A stretch of DNA of 64,000 bases from Macrostomum lignano (lineage: Eukaryota): contig NIVC01001255.1 in the NCBI GenBank assembly GCA_002269645.1, positions 1 to 64,000 of the forward strand, written 5' to 3'. Position 1 is the stretch's first letter, and every line of letters starts with the position of its first letter. Positions 1-53,500 of this stretch are shown here, piece by piece. The position numbers and the translations under genes are program-made. The notes below the pieces were generated by a model, which was not told where the DNA came from, searched no databases, and saw nothing but the letters and a program-made list of their open reading frames with translations.

Positions 1-720
1 TGATCACAGAGTATGTCTCACATGATTACAGAGAATGTCTCGCATGATCACAGAGTATGTCTCACATGATCACAGAGCATGTCTCGCATGATCACAGAGC
101 ATGTCTCACATGATCACAGAGCATGTCTCACATGATCACAGAGCATGTCTCGCATGATCACAGAGCATGTCTCACATGATCACAGAGCATGTCTCACATG
201 ATCACAGGAGCATGTCTCGCATGATCACAGAGCATGTCTCACATGATCACAGAGCATGTCTCACATGATCACAGAGCATGTCTCGCATGATCACAGAGCA
301 TGTCTCACATGATCACAGAGCATGTCTCACATGATTACAGAGCATGTCTCGCATGATCACAGAGCATGTCTCGCATGATCACAGAGCATGTCTCACATGA
401 TCACAGAGCATGTCTCACATGATCACAGAGCATGTCTCACATGATTACAGAGCATGTCTCGCATGATCACAGAGCATGTCTCACATGATCACAGAGCATG
501 TCTCACATGATCACAGAGCATGTCTTACATGATCACAGAGCATGTCTCACATGATCACAGAGCATGTCTCACATGATCACAGAGCATGTCTCACATGATC
601 ACAGAGCATGTCTCACATGATCACAGAGCATGTCTCACATGATCACAGAGCATGTCTCACATGATCACAGAGAATGTCTCACATGATCATAGAGAATGTC
701 TCACATGATCACAGAGAATG
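1..720. repeat. 22-bp minisatellite (GCATGTCTCACATGATCACAGA)n, about 32 copies, runs off the left edge
   Basis: Period-22 tandem array read directly, with few substitutions. Confidence 0.97.
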
Positions 721-1058
721 TATCACGTGAACCCATCCGCTCTTAGTTTGATCATTGCAGTATACTCTTGTTATACGTTTCTCGTAGTATTTTTTTGCAA
801 AATTGTTTCTTTCCAGACTGTAATCGTCAGACAGACACTGCAGAGCCATGCAACAGATGGTTGGAGATGTGTTGAATGTTTAACTATTTTAGCCATCGCT
901 AAAAAGGTAAATTATTTGGATTTCAATGCAATTCAATTGTTTAGTAAAACCTGAAAATTGCAAGTAGATCGCATAACCTATGCAATGCATTGCAGAGCCA
1001 TATTTTGCATATGCTGTCCGATTTCACGGTCGATGAAAACATTTTTTACTTTTTACAG

Positions 1059-1147
1059 GTGCAAAAAGCAGTGAGTCAAGCAGATCGGCCGGAGCTGGGC
1101 CGCGGGCGCCATCCCGGTGGGCTGCGCAGGGCAACTCCGTAGCCTGA
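1059..1147 (+). CDS. Possible terminal exon of a gene lying left of the window
   Basis: Polypyrimidine acceptor TTTTTACAG ends 1058; GC-rich block stops at 1140-1142 or 1145-1147 depending on phase; AATAAA at 1155-1160. Product unknown. Confidence 0.3.
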
Positions 1148-2200
1148 TCTAAAAAATAAAAAGGCCATCCTGAGAAAGCTGAAATAGAAAAAAGAAGTGA
1201 TTACCTATGTTCTCCGCATCTGGAATTATTGTTAACGTTTTCTTTAAAGTTTAGTAGAATTCTTCTTAAATCTGGTTTCAAGCCTAACGGCTTTTTAAAA
1301 ATAAGAAAGTTTGAATAGCAAAAAACCTAAAATAACGAGGACATAGACGCGGTTAATCCATGGGTGTTTATAAAACTAAAAAACGTATTTTAAGCATCTC
1401 AGAGGCTGTCTTTTTACAGTAGGTTACGTAATGCAACCTCTAAAACGAGGTTGTTGACGATGACATGATAATTTTGAGCCTTATCTTTATTTTGCCACTG
1501 TTATTCAGTTTCTAAAGCTATTCATTGTATCAGTGACGGGATATGCTCGAATAATCCGATACGGATTTTCGATTGAAGATGTCTAACTTTTCAGATACGG
1601 TCATATGATTAATCTTGCGATACAAAATGCATAAATTGTCAAATTGAATTCCACGTTCGAATGAGGTTCTGTATAATTAGGTTTTAAATGTACATTTTGC
1701 TCGCACGCTGGGATAGATTTTCCTAAGGTAGCGTGTCATTGATAAAAATATTTTCTTGCGGTTTTAAGTTATTTTTGTCGGTGTTTTCACTTAGGCACCC
1801 ACAGTTGTTAATAGAAACAGTAATCCTATTTTTGGACTTGCGAATATCTCTAGAATAACCAAAAAAATCGAAAGATAGATCTGTCGATTTTTCTGTCGAT
1901 TTTAAATTTTAAATTTTAAAATTTTAATTTTCTGTCGATGTTTAAACTTGTTGATTTTACGAGCTACTTGCAATGAGCGCTTAAATTCTATATTTAGACT
2001 TTCTGTTCAATTGTCAAAAAATTAACTGCACATGCCCAAGAAATTTCATACTCGTATTTCAACTTTTGCATCAAATTTTAATGCTGCAACGATTCTGTTC
2101 CTTTCAGCAGTAAAACCTCGGAACTGAGGCTTAGCGATTCTTTAAGCAAAATATTTTGGTTATTTCATCTTGCGCTGCAAAAAGCGGTTATTTCATCTCA

Positions 2201-2967
2201 ATGGGCAGCTCAAGCAGCCAGCTGAAGCGTTCCAGTTCGATGTCTTCACGTCACAAATCCCGAACGTCAGTTTCTAGAACGTCATCATTGAATAATCGGC
2301 AGATGTCACTCACGTCCGCTGCAAGACCTGCACAAGCAGCCGCGTCTCGTCGGCCGCCTCCAAACGCCTGTTGGTCCGGCGACGCTCTCGACTCTTTGCC
2401 GAAACAAAAAGTCGCAGCTACGACACCGGAATTACGTCATGTGATCGAAGAATTTCGGTCTAACTGGACTCTATTCAACGCTAATATGCTAGAAGACCCC
2501 AATTCGGCTGGCAAACTTCTCCGGCCGCGCCTTGTCAAGAAGATGGAGCCAAGGCTTTTGGATTTGCCTCATGCAGATGCCAGACGATGGAAGCACGTAA
2601 AAGCCAATCTAAATAGACTTCGCTCGAATGTCACGTCCGAGGATATTGAGCTTGCCATATATTCCTTTGGCAATCTAGACCACTTTCACCGACCAAAGTT
2701 GGATGTGCTGCATCATTTACTTAATAACCATTGGCCTCGGGAGAAAGTAGAAAGATTCTACCGGGATATTCTACCTGGAATGATACGTCTGGCACTCTCT
2801 CTGCCGGACCTTTTACCTGAGCAGATTCCGTTGTTAAGCCGCGGTCGACAAGCTGGTTGTCGTCCGTTGAGCTTCACTCAGCAGCAAGTTGCCAGTCTGC
2901 TCACTCACGCTTTTTTTTGCACTTTTGTCTTCCAAGGCGGTCAATATCCAAGTATCAATTTCAATGG
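2201..2967 (+). CDS. PARG: PARG exon 1 (N-terminal disordered region and start of the PARG accessory domain)
   Basis: ATG 2201 (MGSSSSQ); FYRDILPGMIRLALSLP, FTQQQVASLLTHAFFCTF and YPSINFN match PARG-family motifs; donor GG|GTATGA at 2968. Confidence 0.9.
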
Positions 2968-3049
2968 GTATGATTTTTAATTTCTTTTCTTATGTGATTA
3001 ATTTTACTGTTTAATTATCAAGTCTTTAATATCACCTATTAAATTTAAG

Positions 3050-3144
3050 AATATTTGTGTCTGGCGAATATCAAAGGCCGTGCACTCGTCGGATTGAGAA
3101 GCTGAAGTGCATCCTGCACTACATGGATCGCGTTGTTACTGACG
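3050..3144 (+). CDS. PARG: PARG exon 2
   Basis: Acceptor TTTAAG|A; phase-consistent translation GIFVSGEYQRPCTRRIEKLKCILHYMDRVVTD matches the PARG EKLKCxxHYF motif; donor G|GTATGC at 3145. Confidence 0.88.
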
Positions 3145-3231
3145 GTATGCATTGATCCGCAGTATACCGTATAAAGGTCGTCTTATGCCATGGGTTTAGT
3201 TGACGAATGTACGTGTAAAATAGCTGTTTAA

Positions 3232-3822
3232 CAGTAGGAATACCAAGCCATTTTTCCGCCCGTCGAACTACCAAGAGGGGGGGGGATCCCCCCCTGACAA
3301 TTTTTTTGCTGCGCAGGAACGGAGCAACGCAGGCACACGAAATTCAAGAACACGGGCTGACTTTTTGTTGTGCACCTTCTCAAACAAGAATCAAGTCGCC
3401 AGTCCTCCGGACCGTCGAAATATTCGACGATTCTGCCAGAAAGTCTGATTTTTCCCATAAGCGCTAGTGTATTCAGTACACCCCTGTGCGCCAATTAGCA
3501 CTGCGCCTCAGTGCAGCCTTGCCAAGTCTCCAAATTTCATCAGCACGTCGACCACATGTGTCTGCATCAGCTCTGACTTCGTTGGTCACTAGCCTTCACC
3601 CAGGTGGAGCTTCTGGACCCTCAACAGCTGTGGCACCAGGTGACTATGGACACCCTGATGCGGATTTCTCTAGTTTCGCCGATCAAGCCTCGACAGTGGG
3701 CAAGAATCAACCGTCAGACATTCTCAGCTAGTCTCTCAAGCATTCCGTCATCATCCCGACGCCGTCGGCAAAAAATTGTCAGGGGGGGAATTTCCCCCCC
3801 GCCCCTCTTGGTAGTTCTACTG
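3232..3822. mobile_element. Non-autonomous TIR DNA transposon (MITE) in PARG intron 2
   Basis: Ends CAGTAG...CTACTG; subterminal inverted repeats GAACTACCAAGAGGGG..CCCCCCCTGACAATTTTT; flanked by TTAA at 3228-3231 and 3823-3826; internal part recurs at about 15785-16077. Confidence 0.8.
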
Positions 3823-4057
3823 TTAATGAGAAATGGGGGTGTCGTTGTTACTAGCTATTTAAATTGTTAACAAATACAATAAGCTAAGACGCAAAAGTAC
3901 AGACAAGAAGAAAAATTGTCGGTAGGGAAGTGCCGCGCGAGTGTGTCTATCTAGAACCTCTATAGGAGGATAGGACCTACATGTATAAAGCTACGAGTGT
4001 AAGCACGATATTTCATTGTTTTTTTTACAACTCCAATACTTAATATCGCATTTTCAG

Positions 4058-5091
4058 CACCGCTAGGAGTGATCACAATCAGCCGGAAATGCCTTCGACA
4101 CGGAGTTAATTGGTCGGAGAGAACTGAGCCGATGCCTGACCGATTGCACGTTTCGTCCACTGGGACAATTGAAGACACAGGTGGTGGCTTCTTGGAGGTT
4201 GATTTTGCAAACAAATTTCTTGGCGGAGGAGCTCTTGGACACGGATTGATGCAGCAGGAGATCAGATTTATGATTAGTCCTGAGCTAATAGTGACTAGAC
4301 TAGTTACCGAGTGCCTCGATGACAATGAAGCCCTACTAATTGAGGGGTTCGAGAGATTCAGCGACTACTCGGGCTATGCAGACTCTTTCAGGTGGATCGG
4401 CGATCACAAAGATTCACGACCGGTTGGTTTGGACAGACGGCGTTCATCGCACCTGGTTGCCATGGATGCGGTGTGTTTCCGAAGCTGGATTGAGCAGTTC
4501 AGTGTCTATAACATTGAACGAGAGCTCCACAAAGCTTTGGTAGCGTTCGGCGATGTAAAAGACAATAAGAGCGGTGCGCAGCAACATGGCGCAGTTGCCA
4601 CTGGCAACTGGGGTTGTGGCGCGTTCAAGGGTGATGTCAGGCTGAAATTTCTCATCCAGTTGATGGCATGCTCACTCGCCGGGCGGCCTGTGGCGTACTT
4701 CACGTTCGGTGATCAGCTGCTCCAAAAGCGCCTCGTGGAGATGCATCAGTTCCTCATAAATAATAATGTTACAGTGGGTGGCGTCTACAACGCTCTGATT
4801 GCCTACGCAGATGAACTAACACTAACTGTAAGGTCCCATCATACTCGACGCCAAGAAATGACTGCCCAGTCTGCGCCAGACTTGTTTCAATTTGTGATCT
4901 ATTACGTCCAATCAACGCGCGGTCCTTCTTTTTACGATCCAGCTGCGAATTCCAATGTTCCAATGCTGTCGACCAATGGGAAGCATCCAGAACGCATAGC
5001 GAAAACTGGTCAAAGTGGTGAGCGACAGAATTGGCAAAAGTCAGCAAAGATGTCAGGACAGTGGATACCAGAGCAAGTTCAGCACACATGA
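4058..5091 (+). CDS. PARG: PARG exon 3: catalytic macrodomain-like region, to the first in-frame stop
   Basis: Acceptor TTTTCAG|CA in phase with exon 2; motifs EVDFANKFLGGG..QQEIRF, GFERFSDYSGYADSF, AMDA, ERELHKA, ATGNWGCGAFKGD, KFLIQLMACS. Confidence 0.93.
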
Positions 5092-5793
5092 TGCCACCAG
5101 CTGGACAAAGCGGTGAGCATCAGAATCGGCAACAGCCAACGGAGATTTCAGGACAGCAGACTGACCCGAGAGCGAACGTCGGGACACATGGTGCACCAGC
5201 TGGACAAAGCGTTAGACAACACAATCAGAAAAATAAGAAGGCTAGTAAGTCAAATGGGAAGAAGAGAGGCAATGCAGAGAGTCAATCTGAAGCATCTGTT
5301 GGCTGTTTCGGCAAATCTAAACAAACAAATGTTCGTCGTAGTGTTTCTCCAAAAAAACCTGGAAAAGGTAATTGCTTAGTTGATTTTTGCATTTATTTTT
5401 ATGGATTAATTTAGTTATCAATGTGATCAATTCTCATTTTTAGCCATCTTTGCCTAAAATATAGATTTTAGCGCTCAGTTAAAGAAGTTTTCTGTACCAT
5501 TCAAGAATCTCTTCTCTGTATTGGTTTTTTCCGTCTGTTACCATGTTGATATGGCAAAAACTGTTTTTGCATTAAACTAAAGTATTTTCACACCCAGTTA
5601 AAGAAAAATTTGCTGCCTAAGACACAGAGTTTTTTACGAGCTAACTGCTGTAACAATTGGTCTGTTCAGAAAGAAAAAAATAATGCTCTGCTTTGAGTGC
5701 TCAAGAACGCTAAAAACTATATTAACTCAAGTACAGGTGAACTCAAAGCTCATATATAAATCTAAACATAATCTTAACATTTATGTTTTTTAG

Positions 5794-5960
5794 ATCGGCC
5801 GTCGTCGATTCGAGAATCGGGTAGATCAAATCCAAGCGATCGAAGATCAACAGAGGGGGAAAATGCCAATCTGGTTTCAAGTAATACGAATTCTGCAGCC
5901 AGGAGAAGAAGGCGTAAGGTTGAAGCAAATAAGAACTCTGCTTATGTTACAGATGTGTAG
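5794..5960 (+). CDS. PARG: Probable PARG last exon, reachable only in the frame shifted at about 5062
   Basis: Donor AAAG|GTAATT at 5368 (phase 1) joins acceptor TTTTTAG|AT in an open frame DRPSSIRES...RRRRRKVEANKNSAYVTDV*. Confidence 0.6.
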
Positions 5961-6895
5961 TCTTCACTCGAGTTATTAAATGTTATTAATTCAAATTATT
6001 AAATGTGATTTTACAAACTGAACACAAAGACCAACAGTAACTTTTTCAGGAACAAACGTGCAGAGTTGTTTGTTTTTTATTCAATTTGAAAGACGAATCG
6101 ATTCTGTAAGTTCAACTTTTCGATAGTTTATGCCAAAAAAGATATATAATTTCTCTTGCCGTTTTGGCGGAATTGTTTTCAACTTTGCTCAACTTTTTGC
6201 TGTCTTAATATATCCAAGCTGTTTTATTGAGTCACGGAGTTTTAAGTAAATGATCTGGGTGGAAACTGACGCTTATGAAGTTTAAATTCTAATAAAGAGA
6301 GAGTAAAAACTATCTGACGATAAGATTTACAAAATTCAGGTGCTCCGGGCTCAGCGGTGTGGTCATGCTTGAGTACCTTATTGCTGGCTATAACACTCAC
6401 ACCGTAAAAAAACTAATTAAAAAATAACAAAAAATAACATGTGACATCTGTGATCCTTTTCATCAGTTTCGGGACTGCCATTTACTTGTCGCTTACAGAC
6501 AGACCGATTGTGCCCCGCTATTAATTTTACTGATGCCGCTGTTCAGATGCTGGATGCCGGCCATAAAGTATTCCAACTCGTTTATCCCGATGTGATTTTT
6601 CTTTTGGAAGGCCTAATTTTTTTAAGTTCTTAGCCAATTTGCTAATGCAGATTTTTGTATAACATTTTCTTGCTTCAACGACCAATTTTGATAAGTTCTC
6701 TTATTACCAAGTTATACATGTAAAAAATCTTTGAGACATTCCTTTTGTTTTTTTAAAGTGCTTTCGTGTTAATTGTAAAAAGTTGTAACTAAAATAACCC
6801 TACTTTTTTAAGATAAAAATTTATCTGTTTTTCTACCAAGCATTTTGTGACTCGTCTTCTTCAATTTCAAAAACATGAAATTCAAGAAAAACAAT

Positions 6896-7325
6896 GATGT
6901 CTCACATGATCACAAAAGATGTCTCACATGATCACAAAATATGTCTCGCATGATCACAAAGTATGTCTCACATGATCACAAAGGATGTCTCACATGATCA
7001 CAAAAGATGTCTCACATGATCACAAAATATGTCTCACATGATCACAAAATATGTCTCGCATGATACAAAAGATGTCTCACATGATCACAAAATATGTCTC
7101 ACATGATCACAAAGTATGTCTCACATGATCACAAAAGATTCTCACATGATTACAAAAGATGTCTCACATGATCACAAAGTATGTCCCACAATGTCACAAA
7201 AGATGTCTCACATGATCACAAAAGATGTCTCACATGATCACAAAAGATGTCTCACATGATCACAAAAGATGTCTCACATGATCACAAAAGATGTCTCACA
7301 TGACACAGAGAATTTCTCACATGAT
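6896..7325. repeat. 22-bp minisatellite (ATGTCTCACATGATCACAAAAG)n, same family as 1-720
   Basis: Period 22; shares the ATGTCTCACATGATCACA core with the left array, same orientation. Confidence 0.95.
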
Positions 7326-7551
7326 CTGTCTGACATGAACCCAGACGATGTTTCATAGATCCCTTAGGACGTTTCACGTGTACCCAGAGAATTTCTTTTA
7401 TGATTCAAAAGAATGTCTCTCTTAGAGCTCTTTGGCCTGTTCAAATTGTATTGCAAGTGTATTTGTTCAGAAATTTGAGGTTTCTTTACCCCATCTTTCA
7501 GTTCAGCCTAAAGGCAATCTACCTCAGTCTCCAGGGCTCTCGCAGACAAAG

Positions 7552-8109
7552 ATGACGGGCAAACGGCAGCAGCCCGACCCGTTTGACTATCCGTCTTCTC
7601 TAGCATTCGGCATTATTGTTGGCTACGCGTTGGCTCTACTATTCGCGGTAATCATTGCTGCAATTCGACGCAAAAACTGCTGCAAAATTGTCGGTCCTAG
7701 CAGCGACAACTACCACTTGGTCCGCTTGGAGAGAACCGAGGTGGAACCGCTAACCTCGACGCCCGGTCGTGAAGTAGAGAGCAACACTGACTCACCAACC
7801 AGAGTTGCTAACATCGCTGTCGCCCAGACAACAGAGCCTACGGTCGCGAATGCAGATATTGTCACGGTAGAACTCGCACTCACTGGGTCAGAAACGGAGC
7901 GAGAAACTACAGCGGCAGCTGAGCCTGACGAAGTTGAAACAGAAGATGAAGTTAAAAGGCTGCGTCGCCTGACGGAGCAGCTGGACGCCATTTTGGACGA
8001 GTTCAACGCTGATGAGACAGACGACCGAATAGTGCTCGAACTCGCGCAGGAGATCGTGTCTACAGCTATACGTCAAGCTGTTGAAATTTGTCACGCCGAA
8101 AGCAATTAG
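7552..8109 (+). CDS. Single-pass membrane protein (185 aa) with a C-terminal AKAP-like amphipathic helix
   Basis: ATG 7552 inside ORF 7432-8109; TM LAFGIIVGYALALLFAVIIAAI followed by basic RRK; acidic Thr/Glu-rich linker; IVLELAQEIVSTAIRQAV near the C-terminus. Confidence 0.7.
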   Translation: MTGKRQQPDPFDYPSSLAFGIIVGYALALLFAVIIAAIRRKNCCKIVGPSSDNYHLVRLERTEVEPLTSTPGREVESNTDSPTRVANIAVAQTTEPTVANADIVTVELALTGSETERETTAAAEPDEVETEDEVKRLRRLTEQLDAILDEFNADETDDRIVLELAQEIVSTAIRQAVEICHAESN

Positions 8110-8329
8110 TTTTTTTTCTACGCAAGTACAATGGGAAGTGGTGCTCAATTTTGGATTTTTTTGTTTTGATTTTGACTTCTGTGTCAAAGCGACTGCACGG
8201 CGCTATGTACTGCTAGTCTCTTTAACAGTTGCAGAGCCTGGCCATCTTTCTGTACTTTTTTATGCCAGAAATAGTGTTTTATTAATTTTGTTATTAATGT
8301 TACAAAGGACTCGCATTCAAAGTGTCGAA

Positions 8330-8955
8330 TGACTGTCAGGGCCAATTGACTGTCGGTGACAATTGTCTGTCAGTGCCAACTGACTGTCAGTGCCAATTGA
8401 CCGTCAGTGCCAATTGACTGTCAGTGCCAATTGACTGTCAGTGCCAATAGACTCAGTGACATTTGACCGTCAGTGCCAATTGACTGTCGTTGACAATTGT
8501 CTGTCAGTGCCAATTAACTGCCAGTGCCAATTGACTGTCGGTGACAATTGACTGTCAGTGCCAATTGACTGTCAGTGTCAATTAACTGTCAGTGCCAATT
8601 GACTGTCAGTGCCAATTGACTCAGTGACATTTGTCTGTCAGTGCCAATAGACTCAGTGACATTTGACCGTCAGTGCCAATTAACTGTCAGTGCCAATTGA
8701 CTGTCAGTGCCAATTGACTGCCAGTGCCAATTTACTGTCAGTGCCAATTAACTGTCAGTGCCAATTGACTGTCAGTGAAATTTGACTGTCAGTGCCAATT
8801 GACTGCCAGTGCCAATTTACTGTCAGTGCCAATTAACTGTCAGTGCCAATTGACTGTCAGTGCCAATTGACTGTCAGTGCCAATTGACTGTCAGTGCCAA
8901 TTGACTGTCAGTGAAATTTGACTGTCAGTGCCATTTTACTTCTAGTGACAATTGT
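8330..8955. repeat. 17-bp minisatellite (TTGACTGTCAGTGCCAA)n
   Basis: Period-17 tandem array. Confidence 0.95.
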
Positions 8956-9537
8956 TAACGCCATAATTTGCTAACCATAAGAGCATCAGCTAGAAGTTCC
9001 GATTCTTCGAGATTTGTTTTAAACGGAAGCTTTGTTCATCATGCAACATTATACATTCGTCTTCTTATTATTGTGCACAGAATCTTTTTTGTGTCTTCGT
9101 ACTGACTGCATGTTTATTTTCAGTAATAATTTCTAATAGCTTGAAATGCCATCTTTTTGGGTATTAAACTTTTGCAAAAAAAATAAATAAAATCAGCTGA
9201 TTGTTGTCCTATTTATTGTACAACATTTGTGTGCCTTGTTAGCTTGTTTTGTTATATTTGCTTTGTGCTTTTAAAAACTAAATTTGTGCTTGATGCTACT
9301 TTTGTCAGTAGCGTGACGCGATTGCTCTATAGATTTTTTGACGCAGGTTTTTTTTGACATGCGCGCTGGCGGCTGTCGCACCATTTTAATAAAAACTGCT
9401 TTGCCTGGCTTCCTGTGTAGACAGAGGTTTATTGCACAATCCATTATTGGCTCAAGATTTACGAGTATTGATCATTGATGATTTTGTTAAGTTTATTGAA
9501 TTCTTTAATATAATGACACCATCTGCCGCAAGCGCAA

Positions 9538-10143
9538 AGACCATCTGACTAAAATCCCATAAGACCATCTGACTAAAATCCCATAGGACCATCTGACTAA
9601 AATCCCATAGGACCATCTGACTAAAATCCCATAGGACCATCTGACTAAAATCCCATAAGACCATCTGACTAAAATCCCATAGGACCATCTGACTAAAATC
9701 CCATAGGACCATCTGACTAAACTCCCATAGGATTATCGAACTAAAATCCCATAGGACCATCTGACTAAAATCCCATAGGACCATCTGACTAAAATCCCAT
9801 AGGACCATCTGACTAAAATCCCATAGGACCATCTGACTAAAATCCCATAGGACCATCTGACTAAACTCCCATAGGACCATCTGACTAAAATCCCATAGGA
9901 CCATCTGACTAAAATCCCAAAGGACCATCGAACTAAAATCCCATAGGACCATCTAACTAAAATCCCATAGGACCATCGGACTAAAATCCCATAGGACCAT
10001 CTGACTAAAATCCCATAGGACCATCTGACTAAAATCCCATAGGACCATCTGACTAAAATCCCATATGACCATCTGACTAAAATCCCATAGGACCATCGGA
10101 CTAAAATCCTATATGACCATCTGACTAAAATCCCATAGGGCCG
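9538..10143. repeat. 24-bp minisatellite (GGACCATCTGACTAAAATCCCATA)n
   Basis: Period-24 array; explains the repetitive ORFs 9452-9952 and 9733-10182. Confidence 0.96.
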
Positions 10144-11151
10144 TGCGATCAGATTTAAGTCCATTTTAATATATTTCGACATTAAAATGCTAAGAAAACT
10201 CTAAAACATTTAAAAATACTACTTTAAGTAAGATACAGTATATTTTAACACCTTCAATTTTTCTGCCCAATTTCTAAAAAATGAGTTCCTAAATGTTCCC
10301 AAAAATGTTGAAAAATTGACGAAAAACTTTTTACCATCTTTAAAGAAGTGATAAAATTCTACATCCAGTTCCGCTACTTTTTGCTGAGTTCCCTCCGAAG
10401 ATCACGGTTCACTCGTTTTGCCAGAATGAAGAAACTCCCAAAAGAAAAAGTCTTTAGGAATAAAATTTCCAGGATTTTTTTGTCTATCTGGGAGCCCGAG
10501 GGAAAGTTCAGAAATTTGACAGGTGCGAAGGCATTGAGAAGAATTGAATTAGGGGGGGGGGGGGGTAGCGAGGGCGTGACGGCCCAGTGCTGCCGAACCC
10601 AGCCGGTTTTGCATGCATTTGTAATTAGCCAAGCCAGCGACAAAATTTTGGCTAGCAAAGTCAAACAGGCTGGAGGGAGCTGAGGGCAGTGCAAATACCT
10701 GATGCCTCAAAATGCGCCTTGAGTACCTTGAGTACTACTCAAATGCTCGTATGGATGAATACAGTCAATACGGAACCGATTCAACTTGGGTTCTGGTGTG
10801 GTTAAGTGTTAAATTTTCTTTTTATTCAATTTCTTTTCGGGAGGGCTGCGGGCACCCTGAAGCCTTCGGCGACATTGTCTCACAACCAGGGATGAGGCGA
10901 TTCTGGCCATTCAGCTGCCTCCTGAGCACATGCAAGCCCGCCAATACTGTACACACGCTCACACACGTGCCCTGGGGTTGGACCTCACTGGTATGAATCG
11001 CATGGCAGACCTCAGCCACTCTTCATGCAAATTAAACTGGGATTAACATAGACTCGAAATTCTCGAATATTAGGATGAGTAAAGATTGGATTAGTAGAAG
11101 GGATATTGCTAGTTGAGGTAGGGAGTTTTCATGGGAAGATATGGGTCGGGG

Positions 11152-11485
11152 CAGGCGCGTCGCCTCCGGGGGGGGGGGGACAGGGGGGCCATGTCCCCCA
11201 GTAAAAACTATGGGGGGACATTCCAATGCTTTGTCCCCCCACCCTACCTTGTGACCCGTTGTGGTAATCAATATGAGTGCCTGTGGCGCCAAAAGTAGTG
11301 CCTGCGGCACCAAAATGAGTGCCTGTGGCGCCAAAAGTAGTGCCTGCGGCACCAAAATGAGTGCCTGCGGCGCCAAAATGAGCTATGACAACGCGATTCT
11401 CAAAATAATGGAGATGTAGAAATTTAGTCATGTAGAATTCTTGGCTTTGTCCCCACCCACCATAAAATCCATGGCGACGCCCCTG
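11152..11485. mobile_element. hAT-type MITE carrying an internal 21-bp tandem repeat
   Basis: Left end CAGGCGCGTCGCC, right end reverse-complements to CAGGGGCGTCGCC; 8-bp flanks GGTCGGGG / GGTCGGGT (7/8 TSD match); about 5 copies of ATGAGTGCCTGYGGCRCCAAA at 11272-11380. Confidence 0.8.
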
Positions 11486-12274
11486 GGTCGGGTGACAAGA
11501 AATTGGTAGATACTTCACAACCGACAGGGACGGGAAACAACAAAAGTTTGAGGCCCATCAATCAATAAATTAGTCCTCGAAAAGCATTACTTGGATAGGT
11601 TTTTACCACAGACAAAAACTCACTGATTTAAAGGGAATACACTAAGAAGATAGCAGCTCATCGGCCTCCAAATTTTGTTGTTTCACGATGGGAGTTCTAT
11701 CCCATTTCTCATCCAACGGAGGAGTTCCACTCGTATACATTAAAGCTAGCATGGCCATTATGACACTTTGGGCCGCCGCTCTCCCAGATCTGGTGGCGAA
11801 TGACGCAACCTGTTGCGAGAGACGCCTTTACTGAGTTATAGTCTATGGCCCAGAGTTGGTTCACAGGGCCCTGGCAGATTGGGAGATGGCCAAGTGAGGT
11901 CAGACAAAGTCAAGGGGGCAGCTGGGGCTGGTCGGTTCCATCCACGCCCCCCGTGTCCTACGGCCAGGATTGATCATTGTAAAAGTTCTATGCTCATAAA
12001 ATTCAATGATAGCTGGCTGCTCCAGTATAACAATTGACTTTGACCAGCATCAGTTTAGATTGCGCGTTGAGGCCGCGATGGTGTGTGGTGGCGCAAGCGG
12101 TTGCTTTTCAATTTTAATAATCACTTTCAAATTTTGCAGATTTATAAACGATTTTGCTGGCAGCTGTGCATGGCAACTAATGTAAATTCGAATTTATTTA
12201 AGCAATTTTGGATTCAATTTTACCAATCCTTGAGATTTGATTTTTAAAGGAGCGATTGAGTTTCAGATAGTCAC

Positions 12275-12527
12275 TCTTGTGCCAGTCGCGCCTATTAAAC
12301 TCCGCGCTTGTACCAGTCGCGCCTATTAAACTCCGCGCTTGTGCCAGTCGCGCCTATTAAACTGCGCACTTGTGCCAGTCGCTCCTATTAAACTGCGCGC
12401 TTATGCTAGTCGCGCCTATTAAACTGCGCGCTTATGCTAGTCGCGCTTATTAAACTGCGCGCTTGTGCCAGTCGCGCCAACTGAACTGCGCGCTTGTGCC
12501 AGTCACGCCAATTAAACTGCGCGCTTA
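12275..12527. repeat. 31-bp minisatellite (CTTGTGCCAGTCGCGCCTATTAAACTGCGCG)n, about 8 copies
   Basis: Period-31 tandem array. Confidence 0.92.
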
Positions 12528-13419
12528 ATCAGGCATCCGTTTCAGTGGTTGATTCTCAGTGTGCTTCTTGAGAATAATAATCGCTAATGGGGATGCAATT
12601 AAGGTCGGTATCTCATGCTTTTTAAAATGCTAAAAATTTCTATTTTCAAAATTTCTGTCGAGTGCTTGCTTGGGTGATTAAAAAATCGACCTTCAGGCTA
12701 CCTGGCACAAAGCGGCTCAAAATTAAAGACGATTAATCACACAATACTACAACAATTGTCTTCAATAGATGCCATCGACAAACTCGGCCTGCAGTTGCTC
12801 CTTGAGTAACGCAGCAAATCGTTCTGAGTTTTGTTTGCCAACAACGGGCATTTTTTATGAAATTTTTTAATCCCCTGTCCTCCGGCCGGTGTTTAAACTG
12901 CGGCTCCCTCAATTTCCCATTTAATTCCGGCGCTCGAAATGAATTGAAGGAGGGAATGGGAGAGGCAGACAGGAAAGGGTTGAGCGAATATGAATTTCTG
13001 TGGCGGAAGGGGCGCTGAAAAAGCCGGCAAACAGAATTTAATGGCGGCAGGCAGAGCCAATGAATAGACTCGCTATAGAGTGGAGCACGCCGTGTTTGTC
13101 CAAGCCTGATGAGGCTGGGAAGCTGACTTCAAGATTTCGCTTTTTAACTCGAATTGCCCCGAAGTGGATTTATAGAAAGCAAAAAAACTCATTATTCAGT
13201 TCGGGACACGAAAGCCGTCGCTCTATTTACGTGTATTGCTATATTTTTTGTCATGCCGAGCTAAGGGGGTCAGTGAGCCATCCCAGCCCTTTCTTCAGGG
13301 AAATTTTATTTTTGTTAGTGGGACTAAATGTTTCTGAAATCGGTTTTTCTAATTTAATAGCAATTTTTCTGTTTCTGATTAATTGCATGTAGCAGGAACT
13401 GTTTTGGACCCTCCAGAAC

Positions 13420-14295
13420 AACTTGGCGCCCCAGGAACTGACTTGGTGCCTCAAAACCTGACATGGCGCCTCAAGAACTGACATGGTGCCTCAAAACCTG
13501 ACATGGCGCCTCAGGAATTGACATGGCGCCTCAAGGACTGACTTGGCGCCTTAGGGACTGACATGGCGCCTTAGGAACTGACATGGCGCCTCAGGAATTG
13601 ACATGGCGCCTCAAGGACTGACTTGGCGCCTTAGGGACTGACATGGCGCCTTAGGAACTGACATGGCGCCTTAGGAACTGACTTGGCGCCTTAGGGACTG
13701 ACTTGGCGCCTTAGGGACTGACTTGGCGCCTTAGGGACTGACTTGGCGCCTTAGGGACTGACTTGGCGCCTTAGGGACTGACTTGGCGCCTTAGGGACTG
13801 ACTTGGCGCCTTAGGGACTGACTTGGCGCCTTAGGGACTGACTTGGCGCCTTAGGAACTGACTTGGCACCTTAGAGACTGACTTGGCGCCTTAGGGACTG
13901 ACTTGGCGCCTTAGGGACTGACTTGGCGCCTTAGGGACTGACTTGGCGCCTTAGGAACTGACTTGGCACCTTAGGGACTGACTTGGCGCCTTAGGGACTG
14001 ACATGGCGCCTCAAGAACTGACATGGCGCCTTAGGGACTGACTTGGCGCCTCAGGAACTGACTTTGTTGGCGCTTCAAGAACTGACATGGCGCTTCAATA
14101 ATTAACATGGCGCCTCAGGAATCGACATGGTGCCTCAGGGACTAACATGGCGCCTCAGGGACTGACATGGCGCCTAAGAAACTGACATGGTGCCTCAAGA
14201 ACTGACTTAGCGCTTCAAGAACTGACTTGGCGCCTCAAAAACTGACATGGCGCCTCAAAAACTGACATGGCGCCTTAGGGACTGACTTGGCACCT
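13420..14295. repeat. 20-bp minisatellite (ACTTGGCGCCTTAGGGACTG)n, about 44 copies
   Basis: Period 20; homogeneous centre, diverged edges. Confidence 0.97.
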
Positions 14296-47463: not shown

Positions 47464-50229
47464 CTGTTAAATGGCAAGCAAGGTTTGTCGGATATTTTAT
47501 CTATTTTGTTGTAGCTGGGGGAGAATTAGTTCGAAAAGGAGAATAGACAAGAGGGCCTAGACTCGATTCTTGACCCTAAGGTCAGATTATTTTGATTGGT
47601 TTCCGGCTGGTGCAGCTTGCTTTCGATTTTGCAAAGAACGTATCAGTCATCTGATCAGTCCTGATGCAATCATGCAATCGGATGATCATGCAATTTAAGA
47701 GTCAAAGCCATAATAATAAAGGTCTCTGTATGCACGAACCAAGGACCGTAGACCCTGAATACGTTCGTCTGAGTTCTTTCCAATAGTTGGAAGATCAAAT
47801 GGTTAGAAAGTATTAATAAGCGAAGTCGGGATAAAAAAAAATTTGGCTTTTTATCTTAAAGAAATCCTTGGAAAATCATGCAAAAGATGTTTACCTGGCA
47901 ACCAAAGCTACGAGCTAGTTCTGCAACCGTGTGCTCCTCCTCGACAGTGGACTCGTCGAGCAACCAAGCACAGCAGTTCAGCATGCAAGCGATGGCGATA
48001 TGATGCAGGTTGAAAGATACTGTTTGTACAAAGAATAAAGAATTGAAAAAAGCAAAATGATGCACGCAAAAGGTAGGAAACAGGTGAATTAAGATAGATC
48101 AGGATCCAGATGGATCAGACAGTGACTCAGATGATCATTACAGAATCACAACTGGACCAGACTCCGACTCGCCAGGCTCCAAATACGGCCCGCTGAAAGA
48201 CGGGAACGATGAAATCGCATATTAGCGCTACGGTATTCGACATTCGAGGTAATTCGAGGTATTCGACAAAAAAACTCGACACAGCAAATGCAGTTCAAAG
48301 GTCAGATAATTTTGTCGTGACCGAAAAGGGTAAACAAACAAACAAGTCACATGCTAGGAGGTGGGTGGCTTTATGGTTTGGCCAGAGAGACCTTAATCTT
48401 GTAGACTCTAAGACGCCGTTTAATCAGACTAAGAGTTAATTAATTTGACTTTGACGCGAAGATGTCCAGAAGGGTGTAGTTAAGGTTATTTTGTGCACAG
48501 GTTTCCCGAATCAACTATATACTCGTAGAAGTCTCTAAGCACACAAAAAGATTTTTTGTACTACACCTGGATAAGCTTTTAATTCCAAGTACGCTCGTAT
48601 TTTGTTGTTTGTTGTGCCCAGTAATCGTTTGATATCTAGATAGTATTTAATTCAATTGACCTTAAAATTTAAGTTCTCAGTGTTAAGGAGCGAGGAAGCA
48701 TCCCTTCCCTCTCTGCAAGGTCAGCAAGTGAGTGGCCGGCCGTCAAAGTCAGTCTATGTTTCATTTCTCGGGACTTCCTCGGGGTGCACAGTTGCAAAAG
48801 CCCCAAGCTGACTTACCTGCTTGGCACAGCCTGCAGAGCGGTGCGACTCTCTAAAATAAAAAGATTGCGTGGGGTGGTCAAAGTCGCAATACTGTTTGAA
48901 GACTTGCAAATCCAAAGTACCCCCCCCGCACTGGGGAGGCGTGAGGCTTCCTAAATTTCATCTCAAATTAGGGCAGTAACTTCTAGCGCTCTATTTAATT
49001 TAGACTTAAATCTCCATTAGAGTCACTGCAGATAATAAGGAGTTCTTTCTATAGAGCAGTTTCTATAGAGCAGTTAAAATGAGTTAACTGAACTAATGCT
49101 GCAAGGAATCTACACAAATATTCAGAAGTGTCTTCGTTGATGAAAATTTTCCGATTTTGGATAAAATCTGACGTTCGCATGTTAAACAAAACATGCTTAG
49201 ATTCTATTCGACCATGAGCACGCAGCTTCCCGAGCTAGCAATAACTTTAGAAGGTTGCTCGTAGCTTAAAAAGGGATTACCGGTACAAGCAGTCCTTTCT
49301 AGAAGCAAGCAACGCCGAAACAGCAGACAAAAAGAATTCTAGAGAACAGCCTGCTGAGCTATGAGGCTGAGAATTACGTACTAAGTGAAGGAGAAAAGCA
49401 TTCGAGCCGGGAAGGAAAAAGGCAGAAGAGTTTTGCATGACCGAATGCCCGATGCGAACTTGGAAAAGTGCAGCTTTCAAAGTCTGTATAAGTGGCTTCG
49501 TTAAGTTCGGATATTTCAAATCCGGAAGCTTAGCTCGACAAGGCAACTTCATTTCTAATCCGTCATTATATTAGACGTTTTTTAGACCCTGTCCTAACTT
49601 ACTTTGACTTAGCTGCAGGGGGCTCCGTGCGTCGGGAAACAGCGAGGAGGCGTTGCCGCCCATTTCGCTAACCCCTGGCCTAAAGGCATACGTATGGAAC
49701 GCGGTTACTTCAGAAGGAAATTAATGGACACAAGGTGAGATGCAGAGAAGACGATAAATCGAATAACTGATTCAGAATGCAAACCGAACTCAAAAACAGT
49801 TGCACAAATACGTCATTTACCTCGGTTCTAACTAAATAACAACCAATGAACGTAACGTACAAGCCCTGAAGCCTAAAATTAGTGAGACAAAGCTACGAAA
49901 AAAACTGACCGCTTGATGTTGGCGCCGCATTAACGGACCAGCCGATCTGATGCTGGCTATGGTGCAGCGACTCTGCAGGGCCGCCGTACCTTCTCTGCGA
50001 ATCGAGCCGATGCCGCCTGGCCTGATCGTCCAACTCTTTGTCTGGGAAGGCGCCCCGGTGCTGCACAAAGTAGGCCGCCCTCTGCTGGCCCTGGCCGGCC
50101 TGCGGCCTGTCGATGGCGGTGAAGTTCAGAGGGCCAGGTTGCTGCATCTTGTTGGCTCAGAAATAGCAAAGTTAAATCGAAAATTTGTGTCATCTCCTTC
50201 TAATTTTTTTGGATATGTGCGCATCCCTA

Positions 50230-50367
50230 ACAACAATATATGGCGCCCCTGGTGCTGGCGCCCCTGGTGCTGGCGCCCCTGGTGCTGGCGCCCCTGGTGC
50301 TGGCGCCCCTGGTGCTGGCGCCCCTGGTGCTGGCGCCCCTGGTGCTGGCGCCCCTGGTGCTGGCGCG
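50230..50367. repeat. 15-bp minisatellite (GGCGCCCCTGGTGCT)n, intronic
   Basis: About 9 perfect copies; adjacent AAAAATCCTGGCTAC resembles a hAT-MITE end. Confidence 0.92.
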
Positions 50368-50530
50368 CCATCTCCCGACTGCAATGAAAAATCCTGGCTA
50401 CACAATCTACTGAGTACCGCGCACATTCTACAACCTACGGGATAGCTGAATTTTTTAGAAGGCAACATACGAGCGTAAAACTTGAATTTACGGTAAAAAG
50501 CATCTCAGAACTGTACTACACTGGCTGTAC

Positions 50531-53500
50531 CTTGCTGGCGACAGTTGCTGCTGCTGTCGATGAGAGCCGGAGCTAGCAGCGAAGACATCGTCCTCGTCCC
50601 CGCCGCTGGACAGCTTTGCCAGGCGAGTCTGCACCCGAGCTAGCGTGTCGTGCCGCTCCGCCCCGTCCAGCAGGTCGTCGTCCTGCAGCTGCATTTGCCG
50701 GCAGAGGTCTTCGATCTCGCTGACCGGATCGCCTGCGGTTGCTCCGCGGGGACTCAGCAAGGATTCCCGCTTGTTGCGGCGAAGGCTGGCTGCCCCAGTT
50801 GGAAGGACTTTCACCGCGTTGGAAGGCAGCTTCAACGCTGCGCGGTGACGCTCGTTGATTGGGTCATCGGAGTCGTCCGTGTCGGAACCGCCGATGCGGC
50901 CGTTTCCGTTGCTACGCCGCCGGTGCCAGTCAAGCCGCTCTTCCAGTTGCTTCATCAAGTCCCGCGACTGCGGATGCAACTGGTTTCGCTGCTGCTGGTG
51001 ATGCTGCTCCTGAAGTTCGGTCTGGCGCTGTGCAGAGTGCTGATTTGATTGCTCCTTGTACTTGTAAGTCTGCTTCGGCTGGTACTGATAGCGTTGCCCG
51101 TGGTGCGAATTGCTCTGATTGCTCGGCTGCTGGGTATTTGGTTGAGTTTCAATGCGATGCTGATGGTTAGGATTTTGATACTGCTGCTGAAGCTGCTCAT
51201 TTTGATGCTGGCGTGGATGCTGGTGCTGATGCTGGTGCCGAGTTGGAGAATGGTACGGCTGTGACTGCGGCTGAAGAACTCCGATTGATAATCTTGCTGT
51301 GGCAGTCTGAGCAGCACTCGGGCCAACGCTAGAGTTGTCGGGAGCCCCCGGCATGTGAGTCTGAATCTGCGTGCGCGTTCGCGGAGTCGATGCGGCGGAT
51401 TTCGTCTCGTTTGCTCGCTGGATTTGATGTCGCAGACACAGGAGAGCCTCCTGAAGTTACCAACGCTGCAGCGGCTGCGGCTGGCACCTCCATTGGCCGC
51501 TGACGATACGTCGGCTGCTGCTGCGACTGTTGAATGGACGACAAACTATTCGATCGCTGTCGACTGAGTGATGATTCGGCGACCGCTGCCGGCTGTTGTT
51601 GACCTCGGTTTCCGCGCGATATTGGGCGATGCTTGCCCGACGACCAGAGCTGGTTCTGCTGGTCCTGCTTTCGCGGCCGCTGAGGCTGCTGGTGGTGGTG
51701 GTAATTGTGCAGATGGTAATGCTGCTGATGAACTGGCGGCGGTGGTGGTGGCGGTTGCGGCGGTGGTGGTGGCGGTGGCGGCGGCGGCGGCTGCGGCGGC
51801 GGCTGCGGCGCTGGAGGAGGTGGCATGAATTGCTCCTTCCTCTGGATGGGCACCACTGCAGGCGCTGGGGAAACCTGGATCTGCTTGTATAAATGGTCAG
51901 CAGAGGCCGCCTCACCTGCACTGCGCCGCTGCCTTCGTGGAGGCACTGGAGGTACCGGTGACGTTAACTGCGGTGGCTGCTGCGGCGGTGGCTCCTGCCT
52001 CTGATACTGAAGATTGACTTGCGCAGCGTAGCGATCAGTGCTAGGTCGATACCTATAGGCATCAGTGAGGGTCTCGCTGCCTTTCGGGTAGAGGTCGCTA
52101 GTCCGAATGGATGTCGGCAGCGAAGAGCTCTGGCTGTTTGCCGCTGTTGAGTCGCGCTGCTGCTGGTTCTGATAATGCTGGTGCTGCTTGTGCTGGTGCT
52201 CGCGCTGATCTGGCTTCTGCCGCCGAGGCTGATGGTTTGAATCTTGATATCGGTGCTGGTACTGCTGCCCGCGTTTCGGCTGGTGCTGGTGATGATTCTG
52301 GTGCCATCTGTCGTCACCAACGAGGCCGTCTACCGCTTCAAACACAGCGTCGTCATCGTCATCGTCGTCCGCTTCGTCAGCGCTGACGCTGACTAAACGC
52401 GCGGTGGCCGTTGCCATGGCTGCAGAGTATTCCGGCGCAGGCGGAGGTAACGGGCGCTTCTTTCTTTGCCGAGAAGAGCGCTTCCTGTGCGGCAGGTATT
52501 TGTACACGTCCTCGCCTTGCTGATGCAGCTGCTCCTGCGGCGGCCTTTGAGTCTGATAACCGTTGCTACCGCCAACTGTAAGCGGACTGTTTGAGTAAGT
52601 AAAAAGTTGGCGCAGCTGCTCTTCAACTTGCGACTTTGGCTGCTGCTGCTGCTGCTGCTGCTCTGCCTCCCTTTCTGGTCTGCTTTTTCGCCGCTGTGGC
52701 CATAGTTCATTATTTTCGCTTGAGTGTGCGGCTGCACCCAATTGTACTCTGGCAGAGCTGAGGTGTACACCAGCATGGGCCGAGCTCTGCTCCGCGGGAG
52801 AGCCAACACCCCACTCCGCAGCCACCTCGAGCCCCCACTGAGCGTCAGTCAACGGTCCTTGCTCACCCGTTGCGCGAGTGGGTCTCTGGCGCTCCGGCGG
52901 AGGTGGGTGGGGCAGCTTTCTGCGCCTCGCCGCCGGCTCCTCCTCCAACTCCTCCACCTCCACCTGCGGCCCTCGCTCCGCTACCGCAGGCTGTCGCCAG
53001 TTAAGCGACATTTGCACATGCAATCGAGTCGCATTCGCATCTTGCTTTTCCATTTCAGCTGCAGTTGCAGGTGCCTTATGTTCTGTGAGCACTGGCGGAA
53101 GCGGCTCGGGTTCCAGATCCGGCTCCGGTTTTGGTTCAGATTCCAGTTCCACGTCCGGCTTCATCTCTGAGCGACTGCCGCCTGAGCTTTGCGATCGCCG
53201 GCGCGGCCTCAGCGGATCTCGCGGCGGCCCGCGCAGCCGCTCGAGACTCGACAGTTTGCCGCTGGGTTGCTGCAGCTGCGCCACGGGCAGGAAGGCCTCA
53301 GAGTCGGCCTGTGCTGCCCACGAGCCGTGCCGGTCCACGGGCGCGGCCGAGGAGGAGCGCGATCTCGATGGCGATGACGACGCGCGACTGCGGTGCCGGC
53401 TCCGACGTCGCGGCGTCGACTCACCGGAAGACACGGCGGTTCGAGAGCGCGAGTCGATGACTTTGATCTTGCGTATCCGGCTAAAACGACTGGGAGCGCC

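What the first reader, a model, noticed from the sequence alone, without database searches (positions are those of the whole stretch)
7552..8109. Candidate membrane-anchored micro-AKAP
Seen: 185-aa single-TM protein whose last helix (8029-8082) is IVLELAQEIVSTAIRQAV. Known: PKA R-subunit anchoring helices follow L-A-x-x-I-V-x-x-A-I-x-x-A, e.g. the designed AKAP-IS peptide QIEYLAKQIVDNAIQQA; all core positions L, A, I, V, A, I, Q, A match. The RRKNCC after the TM suits a cytosolic C-terminus and possible palmitoylation. Inference: a lineage-specific small AKAP that homology search would miss.
Basis: partly seen in the sequence, partly recalled or inferred. Interest (0 to 1): 0.72.

Follow-up and report, generated by a model that had tools for sequence, protein, structure and literature searches.

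The report
Flatworm membrane protein with AKAP-like helix
A small, flatworm-only membrane protein ends in a helix that copies the contact surface of the best-known protein-kinase-A anchoring peptide, which makes it a reasonable but unproven candidate for a new kinase anchor.

Summary
Window 7552-8109 (+) is a 185-aa ORF in Macrostomum lignano (contig NIVC01001255.1). GenBank annotates it as hypothetical protein Mlig016373, from RNA-seq-built models.

Predicted layout:
- 16-aa N-terminus and one TM helix (17-38)
- RRKNCC next to the membrane
- an 85-aa acidic disordered linker
- a C-terminal helix-loop-helix

Residues 160-177 place V-L-A-I-V-A-I-A on the eight contact positions of an RII-docking helix; AKAP-is has I-L-A-I-V-A-I-A. 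Seven of the eight outward-facing residues are polar. That combination was rare in a prokaryotic control set.

The AKAP reading remains untested:
- No homologue exists outside M. lignano, so conservation cannot be judged, and the three genomic copies are too alike to show selection.
- Pfam's RII-binding model does not detect the helix.
- Its nearest PDB sequence matches are designed helical-repeat proteins.
- AlphaFold packs it against the preceding helix as a hairpin.

My best single mechanism is membrane docking of an RIIa-type D/D dimer (PKA-RII or an R2D2 protein), at about 0.35. Coincidental hairpin and non-functional orphan gene are close rivals. The N-terminus weakly resembles FXYD/phospholemman; this is a lead only.

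The parts
7500..7551 (+). AG acceptor (7500-7501, after a tttc tract) and 5' leader of the annotated transcript. The GenBank partial CDS opens at 7504 (QPKGNL...). The first ATG is at 7552, with A at -3.
   Evidence: The exon boundary is inferred from the start of the annotated 201-aa partial product and from the TBONE trans-splice-based boundary method.
7552..8109 (+). Coding sequence of 185 aa plus stop, for hypothetical protein Mlig016373 (copy g? on NIVC01001255.1).
7552..7599 (+). Residues 1-16, a short N-terminal (predicted extracellular or luminal) segment containing DPFDYP. This is a weak likeness to the FXYD motif.
7600..7665 (+). Residues 17-38, the single transmembrane helix LAFGIIVGYALALLFAVIIAAI, with a GxxxG motif (G20-G24).
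   Evidence: KD 2.75; helix 15-46
7666..7686 (+). Residues 39-45, RRKNCCK. This is a positive-inside signal with two juxtamembrane cysteines (C43, C44) that are candidates for palmitoylation.
   Evidence: charge +3 against 0. Palmitoylation is inference only.
7687..7941 (+). Residues 46-130, an acidic T/E/A/V-rich linker (net charge -12) predicted to be disordered. It contains YHLV (54-57), a YxxPhi-type motif.
   Evidence: pLDDT below 50 for residues 41-129
7942..8010 (+). Residues 131-153, amphipathic helix 1 (hydrophobic moment muH 0.64). It contains RRLT (138-141), a PKA-type RRxS/T site. The only difference among the three genomic copies, G7975A = E142K, lies at the +1 position of that site.
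8011..8022 (+). Residues 154-157, the acidic loop (DETD) between the two helices.
8023..8103 (+). Residues 158-184, the terminal amphipathic helix 2.
8029..8082 (+). Residues 160-177, IVLELAQEIVSTAIRQAV, the AKAP-like core. Its contact face is V161 L164 A165 I168 V169 A172 I173 A176.

Best explanation
Shown: this is a transcribed gene, restricted to Macrostomum, for a 185-aa single-pass membrane protein.

Predicted: it has a short N-terminus outside, one TM helix with GxxxG, RRKNCC on the cytosolic side, a long acidic disordered tether and a C-terminal helix-loop-helix.

Inferred mechanism: the last helix (residues 160-177) serves as a docking site for a dimeric RIIa-type docking/dimerisation (D/D) domain. 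Its ridge of alternating large and small aliphatic side chains (V-L-A-I-V-A-I-A) would lie in the groove of the D/D four-helix bundle. The protein would then tether PKA type II, or a non-kinase R2D2 protein such as a ROPN1L/SPA17 relative, to a membrane on a flexible leash of about 85 residues. It would be a membrane-anchored micro-AKAP. It lacks the F/Y-A start of RI-selective helices, so an RII-type or dual partner is expected. The RRLT site in the preceding helix could be a local PKA substrate.

The combined non-AKAP alternatives are together more likely than this reading. It is only the most likely single specific mechanism.
For: - All eight contact positions defined for AKAP helices carry residues found in high-affinity RII binders, and 7 of 8 are identical to AKAP-is (Kd 0.4 nM for RIIalpha).
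- The opposite face is 7 of 8 polar. Among 120 prokaryotic sites with the same face, only 2 are that polar. Among 591,462 residues of unselected prokaryotic frames, the 14 class-pattern hits are all hydrophobic and TM-like.
- The segment is predicted helical, with no Pro or Gly.
- It sits at the end of a disordered tail on the predicted cytosolic side of a membrane anchor. This is the layout of the small lipid-anchored AKAP7alpha and of smAKAP.
- The gene model derives from RNA-seq evidence.
- RI and RII subunits date from the metazoan ancestor, and D/D domains occur in invertebrates.
- Non-kinase D/D proteins also bind such helices.
Against: - There is no binding, localisation or expression data.
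- There is no homologue in 1.84 billion representative proteins, so conservation of the helix cannot be tested.
- The three genomic copies are as alike in their flanks as in the CDS, so they give no signal of selection.
- Pfam RII_binding_1 gives no hit at E<=10, while Ht31 scores 29.3 bits and AKAP-is 16.3 bits. The known binder AKB-RII is also missed, so this model has limited reach.
- The best PDB sequence matches are designed helical repeats (E 8.5e-4) and uS10.
- AlphaFold (pLDDT 75) and Foldseek neighbours (Rop, EsxA, designed hairpins) indicate an antiparallel hairpin in which the docking face packs on helix 1.
- Membrane topology is predicted only.
- The motif was recognised after the fact, in a scan covering many motif types.
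Confidence: 0.35

Rival explanations
1. The likeness is coincidental. The two C-terminal amphipathic helices form a self-contained antiparallel hairpin, with the large Leu/Ile/Phe face of helix 1 packing on the small Ala-rich face of helix 2. The hairpin may pair into a Rop-like four-helix bundle, helped by the GxxxG motif in the TM helix. The hydrophobic ridge would then be structural, or would bind an unrelated partner, and no D/D domain would be recruited.
For: - AlphaFold on residues 125-185 gives two helices at pLDDT 75 and pTM 0.42. The structural neighbours are helical hairpins (Rop TMq 0.55-0.6, EsxA 0.70), though none is significant.
- phmmer against PDB aligns both helices and the loop to designed helical-repeat units such as ...TGDPEVRELARELVRLAVEAAEEV.
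- Helix 1 is strongly amphipathic (muH 0.64) and needs a partner.
- The same face occurs in proteins of organisms without an AKAP-PKA system.
Against: - A two-helix hairpin is marginally stable on its own.
- Single-sequence AlphaFold tends to collapse amphipathic helices onto each other.
- No Foldseek hit is significant (best E 0.96).
- A hairpin and D/D docking need not exclude each other, because a nanomolar partner could open the hairpin.
Confidence: 0.3
2. This is a young orphan gene with no specific molecular function, or a transcript whose ORF is not translated. The features are by-products of sequence composition, in a locus squeezed between satellite arrays.
For: - No homologue was found anywhere and there is no Pfam domain.
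- The gene lies between tandem arrays at 6896-7396 and 8330-8954.
- About 0.3 ATG-ORFs of this length are expected by chance in 64 kb (own estimate), and 12 ATG-ORFs of 185 aa or more exist in the window.
- The protein cluster has only NCBI members and no independent transcript-assembly (Logan) source, although such sources exist for other eukaryotic proteins.
- The gene is not named in the supplements searched.
Against: - The annotation rests on RNA-seq, and the ORF fills the transcript from an AG acceptor.
- The protein has an ordered, non-random layout of TM helix, basic-Cys cluster, linker and two capped helices.
- It is kept intact in all three genomic copies, though that is weak evidence because the flanks are equally alike.
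Confidence: 0.2
3. The N-terminal module (DPFDY, TM helix, RRKNCC) is a divergent FXYD-type accessory subunit of a P-type ATPase. The tail would then act as a regulator. This reading is compatible with, but does not depend on, the AKAP reading.
For: - Phospholemman chains are the only PDB sequences hit by residues 1-60 at E<=10 (E 1.6).
- hhalign against 15 FXYD1-type sequences gives probability 39% and P 3e-4 over 41 columns.
- An HMM built here scores 10.2 bits, and only 1.65% of architecture-preserving shuffles reach that score.
Against: - Pfam PF02038 does not hit, and no score is significant.
- The D of FxYD, the second conserved TM glycine and the boundary serine are missing.
- All 120 FXYD relatives listed are from vertebrates.
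- Short TM proteins readily give spurious similarity.
Confidence: 0.08

Closest known systems
AKAP-is / Ht31 (RII-anchoring helix peptides)
   Same: The same 3-4-spaced ridge of aliphatic and small residues is present. The contact face is VLAIVAIA, against ILAIVAIA in AKAP-is and IAAIVVIV in Ht31. The flanks are acidic and polar, and there is no helix breaker.
   Different: AKAP-is is a designed consensus and Ht31 comes from AKAP-Lbc. There is no homology to the query. Pfam's RII_binding_1 model scores those two peptides but not this helix.
AKAP7alpha (AKAP15/18alpha) and smAKAP, small membrane-attached AKAPs
   Same: These are very small proteins that consist essentially of a membrane anchor plus one anchoring helix near the C-terminus.
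   Different: They attach through N-terminal lipid modification rather than a TM helix. Both are vertebrate inventions. smAKAP is RI-selective through an F/Y-A start, which the query lacks because it begins I-V. There is no sequence relationship.
D-AKAP1 and GPR161 (membrane-integrated AKAPs)
   Same: Both are integral membrane proteins that present an anchoring helix to the cytosol (the D-AKAP1 TM anchor is from my own knowledge).
   Different: They are large multidomain proteins conserved across animals or across vertebrates. The query is 185 aa and is an orphan.
RSP3 (radial spoke protein 3)
   Same: It has an AKAP-type amphipathic helix that binds RII in overlay assays.
   Different: In vivo its partners are non-kinase RIIa- and Dpy-30-domain spoke proteins (PMC3494852). 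This shows that an RII-positive helix need not anchor PKA. RSP3 is axonemal, not a membrane protein.
De novo designed helical repeat proteins and Rop-type hairpins
   Same: These are the best sequence matches in PDB (helix, acidic capped loop, helix with LAxxLVxxAVxxA) and the closest fold neighbours of the model.
   Different: They are artificial or bacterial soluble proteins. The similarity reflects idealised helix packing rather than descent.
FXYD1 / phospholemman
   Same: It has a short ectodomain with PFxY, one TM helix with a conserved glycine, a juxtamembrane RRxxC(C)K, and a cytosolic tail with PKA-type sites.
   Different: The family's invariant residues are only partly present, and the Pfam model does not match. 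The known family is vertebrate, and its tail is short and basic rather than long and acidic.

Membership tests
AKAP (functional class: A-kinase anchoring proteins) | A 14-18 residue amphipathic helix with hydrophobic side chains at helix positions 2, 5, 6, 9, 10, 13, 14 and 17 | tested here: met
   The positions carry V161, L164, A165, I168, V169, A172, I173 and A176. The positions are as defined in PMC12083921. The segment is predicted helical.
AKAP (functional class: A-kinase anchoring proteins) | Direct binding to the D/D domain of a PKA regulatory subunit, competed by Ht31 and lost on a helix-breaking proline change | not testable with these tools
   This is the operational definition of the class.
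AKAP (functional class: A-kinase anchoring proteins) | A targeting element that places the helix at a defined cytosolic site | tested here: inconclusive
   There is one TM helix with flank charges of 0 (N side) and +3 (C side), which predicts a cytosolic C-terminus. Topology has not been measured.
AKAP (functional class: A-kinase anchoring proteins) | Anchoring helix conserved among orthologues | tested here: inconclusive
   There are no orthologues in the databases. The three in-genome copies are near-identical in the flanks too.
Pfam RII_binding_1 (PF10522) | Score at or above the gathering cutoff of 18.8 bits | tested here: not met
   The query helix gives no hit at E<=10. Control peptides: Ht31 29.3 bits, AKAP-is 16.3 bits, AKB-RII no hit.
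RI-selective AKAPs (smAKAP type) | F/Y-A at helix positions 1-2 | tested here: not met
   Positions 1-2 are I160-V161.
AKAP7 / smAKAP / other Pfam AKAP families (by homology) | A significant match to the family model | tested here: not met
   The whole-protein Pfam scan at E<=1 returned only noise: Mistic, DUF768 and AJAP1.
FXYD (PF02038) | A match to the Pfam model | tested here: not met
   No PF02038 hit at E<=10.
FXYD (PF02038) | The P-F-x-Y-D signature before the TM helix | tested here: inconclusive
   P10-F11-D12-Y13 is present, but the signature D is replaced by P14.
FXYD (PF02038) | Two conserved TM glycines and a serine at the cytosolic boundary | tested here: not met
   Only the first glycine (G20) aligns. 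The second is V/A and the serine is R/I in the hhalign alignment.

The most novel reading that the evidence does not exclude
A flatworm protein joins a divergent FXYD-like pump-docking module (PFxY, TM helix, RRxxCC) to a built-in PKA-anchoring helix and an RRLT substrate site. One 185-aa polypeptide would then do what phospholemman plus a separate AKAP do in vertebrate heart. It would also be the first FXYD-type regulator outside vertebrates, and an AKAP that arose de novo in one lineage.
Probability: 0.04. Interest if true: 0.8.

Novelty: new member of a known kind. Interest (0 to 1): 0.38.

Why it matters
AKAPs are defined by a short helix rather than by homology, so lineage-specific members escape sequence searches. 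Few are known outside vertebrates, and my one literature search (AKAP plus flatworm terms) listed no flatworm AKAP paper among its top results.

A confirmed transmembrane micro-AKAP in M. lignano would show that anchoring helices arise de novo in orphan genes. It would also give a minimal, genetically tractable anchor, because transgenesis exists for this worm. If the helix binds only in vitro, or not at all, the case becomes a calibrated warning. Here a match to all eight contact positions of the anchoring consensus (7 of 8 identical to AKAP-is), with a cleanly polar opposite face, sits beside equally good matches to designed helical bundles.

Tried and rejected
- **Homology.** Three searches found only M. 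lignano: the search for homologous proteins with the full protein, an exhaustive phmmer against 1.84 billion representatives, and the C-terminal 53 aa at E<=10 (which returned nothing, not even the self-cluster, so the word index failed on the short query).
- **Selection from paralogues.** The three genomic copies differ by 0-1 nt in the CDS, but the flanks from 6300 to 8350 are just as alike. This is uninformative.
- **Pfam, whole protein and pieces.** Only noise was returned.
- **PDB sequence search for AKAP peptide chains.** None was retrieved.
- **Foldseek of the tail model.** No significant hit.
- **Genome-wide rate of the AKAP-is-like face in prokaryotes.** I used the sample and its flanking ORFs instead.
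- **Expression.** The gene id is absent from the full text of the library and from the held supplements of two M. lignano papers.
- **Published prediction rules and peptide-array papers.** McLaughlin 2011 and Alto 2003 are not held. Searches for THAHIT and for the Hundsrucker pattern string found nothing usable.
- **Co-folding with an RII D/D domain.** Not attempted, because the structure tool takes one chain from this window only.
- **Signal peptide instead of TM helix.** Rejected, because the hydrophobic stretch is 22 residues long and starts at residue 17.
- **RI-selective AKAP.** Rejected, because there is no F/Y-A motif.
- **Rfam scan of the window.** Nothing found.

Full report
**What the window is.** The 185-aa product has one database relative at 99% identity: GenBank PAA83401.1, 'hypothetical protein BOX15_Mlig016373g3, partial [Macrostomum lignano]'. 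Looking up the contigs that encode it gave three loci in assembly GCA_002269645.1. One of them (NIVC01001255.1, positions 1504-14109) is identical to window 1504-14109. The window is therefore the first 64 kb of that contig, from a free-living flatworm. Upstream lies a poly(ADP-ribose) glycohydrolase gene (Pfam PARG_cat_C, 2e-77).

**Checking the observation.** The ORF runs from 7552 to 8109 on the + strand and gives 185 aa plus a stop. The quoted helix is residues 160-177, at 8029-8082.
- A single 22-residue hydrophobic stretch (17-38, Kyte-Doolittle 2.75) is followed by RRKNCCK.
- AlphaFold on the full protein gives a helix at 15-46, no confident structure at 41-129, and two helices at 131-153 and 158-184.
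- Using the contact positions 2, 5, 6, 9, 10, 13, 14 and 17 reported for AKAP helices, the query reads V-L-A-I-V-A-I-A and AKAP-is reads I-L-A-I-V-A-I-A. Ht31 reads IAAIVVIV.

**Is the gene real?** The GenBank annotation of this assembly was built only from RNA-seq. It used StringTie/TACO assemblies cut at experimentally mapped trans-splice and poly(A) sites, with non-coding transcripts removed.
- The annotated 201-aa partial product starts at codon 7504, three bases after a tttcAG acceptor at 7500-7501. The first ATG (7552) has A at -3.
- This indicates transcription, but I could not see reads. The gene id appears in no paper or held supplement.
- The protein cluster has no member from an independent transcript assembly.
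- Two UniProt models from the older ML2 assembly instead splice the PARG gene (donor 5019|5020) to an acceptor at 7534|7535 and stop after codon 32. I treat these as prediction artefacts.

**Relatives and selection.** Neither the indexed search nor an exhaustive phmmer against 1.84 billion representatives found anything outside M. lignano. Pfam finds no domain. The gene is an orphan as far as these collections reach, though other Macrostomum species may not be in them. The three genomic copies differ by one base (G7975A, E142K) or none. The non-coding flanks from about 6300 to 8350 are equally invariant, so nothing can be said about purifying selection.

**How unusual is the helix?**
- A class pattern drawn from known binders ([ILV]xx[ILVA][AS]xx[ILV][ILV]xx[AV][ILVM]xx[AVIL]) has an iid probability of 5.9e-6 per residue. 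It occurs once in the 42,708 residues of open frames in the window, in this ORF.
- The AKAP-is-like face has an iid probability of 2.9e-9 per residue.
- Shuffles of residues 128-185 give a class match in 0.05% of trials.
- As an empirical null I back-translated the face into a DNA pattern. It hits the window once and hits prokaryotic genomes, which lack an AKAP-PKA system, at least 120 times.
- Most of those sites are all-hydrophobic, TM-like segments. Only 8 of 120 have 6 or more polar residues at the eight non-contact positions, and only 2 have 7 or more. The query has 7.
- A few are strikingly AKAP-like, for example DELLDQLATQIVDRAIDQA. The pattern can therefore arise without PKA.
- In 591,462 residues of unselected prokaryotic frames, the class pattern occurs 14 times (four times the iid expectation), and none of these hits is amphipathic.

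The combination of a full ridge and a polar back is therefore rare. The criterion was chosen after the match was seen, and a scan over a whole genome and many motif types reduces the weight of these figures.

**Evidence that cuts the other way.**
- Pfam's curated RII_binding_1 model scores Ht31 at 29.3 bits (cutoff 18.8) and AKAP-is at 16.3 bits, but reports nothing for the query helix at E<=10. It also misses the nanomolar binder AKB-RII, so its reach is limited.
- phmmer against all PDB chains returns no AKAP peptide. The best hits are de novo designed helical-repeat proteins (E 8.5e-4 for the 54-aa tail). Their repeat unit aligns with helix 1, the acidic loop and helix 2. With the helix alone, ribosomal protein uS10 also appears.
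- AlphaFold on residues 125-185 alone gives two helices at pLDDT 75. The nearest folds, none significant, are antiparallel hairpins such as Rop and EsxA.
- Helix 1 is strongly amphipathic, with large Leu/Ile/Phe residues (muH 0.64). It would pack well on the Ala-rich face of helix 2. If that hairpin is stable, the docking face is occupied.

**Mechanism.**
- Shown: the sequence features and the predicted helices.
- Predicted: an N-out, C-in topology from the charge difference (0 against +3), a disordered acidic tether, and possible palmitoylation at C43/C44.
- Inferred: the terminal helix docks an RIIa-type D/D dimer.

Several points favour this inference. The ridge is that of the strongest known RII binder. 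The helix sits at the free end of a flexible cytosolic tail. AKAPs arise readily by small sequence changes and differ between lineages. RI and RII, and many non-kinase D/D proteins, are present across animals. The missing F/Y-A start argues against an RI-selective anchor. The RSP3 precedent shows that such a helix may serve non-kinase D/D partners. My judgement, not a computation, is as follows: the isolated peptide is more likely than not to bind an RII D/D domain in vitro, and the probability of a physiological docking role is about 0.35. The rivals are a coincidental structural hairpin (0.3), an orphan gene without specific function or translation (0.2), and an FXYD-like accessory subunit (0.08, not exclusive of the other readings).

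**Side observation.** Residues 6-45 (QQPDPFDYPSSLAFG...RRKNCCK) resemble the core of FXYD/phospholemman (DPFxYDYxSLRIGG...SRRCRCK).
- Phospholemman chains are the only PDB sequences hit by residues 1-60 at E<=10 (E 1.6).
- hhalign against 15 vertebrate FXYD1-type sequences gives 39% probability.
- 1.65% of architecture-preserving shuffles reach the query's HMM score.
- Against this, Pfam's FXYD model does not match, and three family invariants are absent.

This is a lead, not a finding.

**Comparison with known systems and novelty.** Functionally, the nearest known proteins are the very small membrane-attached AKAPs, AKAP7alpha and smAKAP. Both are lipid-anchored and vertebrate-specific, and neither is related in sequence to the query. 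Membership of the AKAP class is defined by binding, which I could not test. The sequence-level criterion is met, the one curated model is not, and conservation is untestable. If the binding is real, this would be a new, lineage-specific member of a known kind with an unusual transmembrane anchor. I score interest at 0.38: it is a clean and cheaply testable candidate, but it currently rests on one motif in an orphan protein.

Noticed in passing
window 7567-7686 (residues 6-45): The N-terminal module resembles FXYD/phospholemman: PFxY, a TM helix with an aligned glycine, and RRxxCCK. Phospholemman chains are the only PDB hits (E 1.6), hhalign gives 39% probability, and 1.65% of block shuffles score as well. 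Pfam FXYD does not match and three family invariants are missing.
   Followed up: partly
window 5019|5020 donor, 7534|7535 acceptor, 7647|7648: UniProt models A0A1I8H247 and A0A1I8G9J8 (older ML2 assembly) fuse two tandem PARG paralogues in frame to the first 32 codons of this ORF, and end at a GT inside the TM-coding region. The RNA-seq-based GenBank models keep PARG and this gene separate.
   Followed up: partly
window 7963-7977 (residues 138-142): RRLT is a PKA-type RRxS/T site in the helix that precedes the AKAP-like helix. The only difference among the three genomic copies (G7975A, E142K, in NIVC01000420.1) changes the residue just after the threonine.
   Followed up: no
window 6896-7396, 8330-8954, 9539-10139, 11269-11382, 12276-12526, 13421-14000: The gene is wedged between satellite arrays with periods of 22, 17 (37 copies), 24 (25 copies), 21/42, 31 and 20 nt. 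The 24-nt array produces the long repetitive ORFs (MVLWDFSQ...) on the minus strand.
   Followed up: partly
window 1-5091 (+); loci L001-L003: A multi-exon PARG gene lies upstream (catalytic domain in ORF 4069-5091). The assembly holds three copies of the whole PARG-plus-Mlig016373 block at about 98% identity, and the copies carry different PARG gene models (631, 807+ and 843 aa).
   Followed up: partly
window 50000-54200 and 62000-64000: There are blocks of about 60% GC in a window that is otherwise about 44% GC. One carries a 934-aa ORF on the minus strand (51329-54133), plus others of 260-300 aa. None has a Pfam match.
   Followed up: partly
window 7711-7722 and 7609-7623: YHLV (residues 54-57) fits a YxxPhi sorting signal 16 residues after the TM helix. 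GIIVG (residues 20-24) is a GxxxG helix-pairing motif inside the TM helix.
   Followed up: no
L082, L069, L020, L046 (prokaryotic loci): Some bacterial ORFs carry amphipathic helices with the same AKAP-is-like face, for example DELLDQLATQIVDRAIDQA in a Sphingomonas contig. They could serve as natural negative, or unexpectedly positive, controls in RII-binding assays.
   Followed up: no
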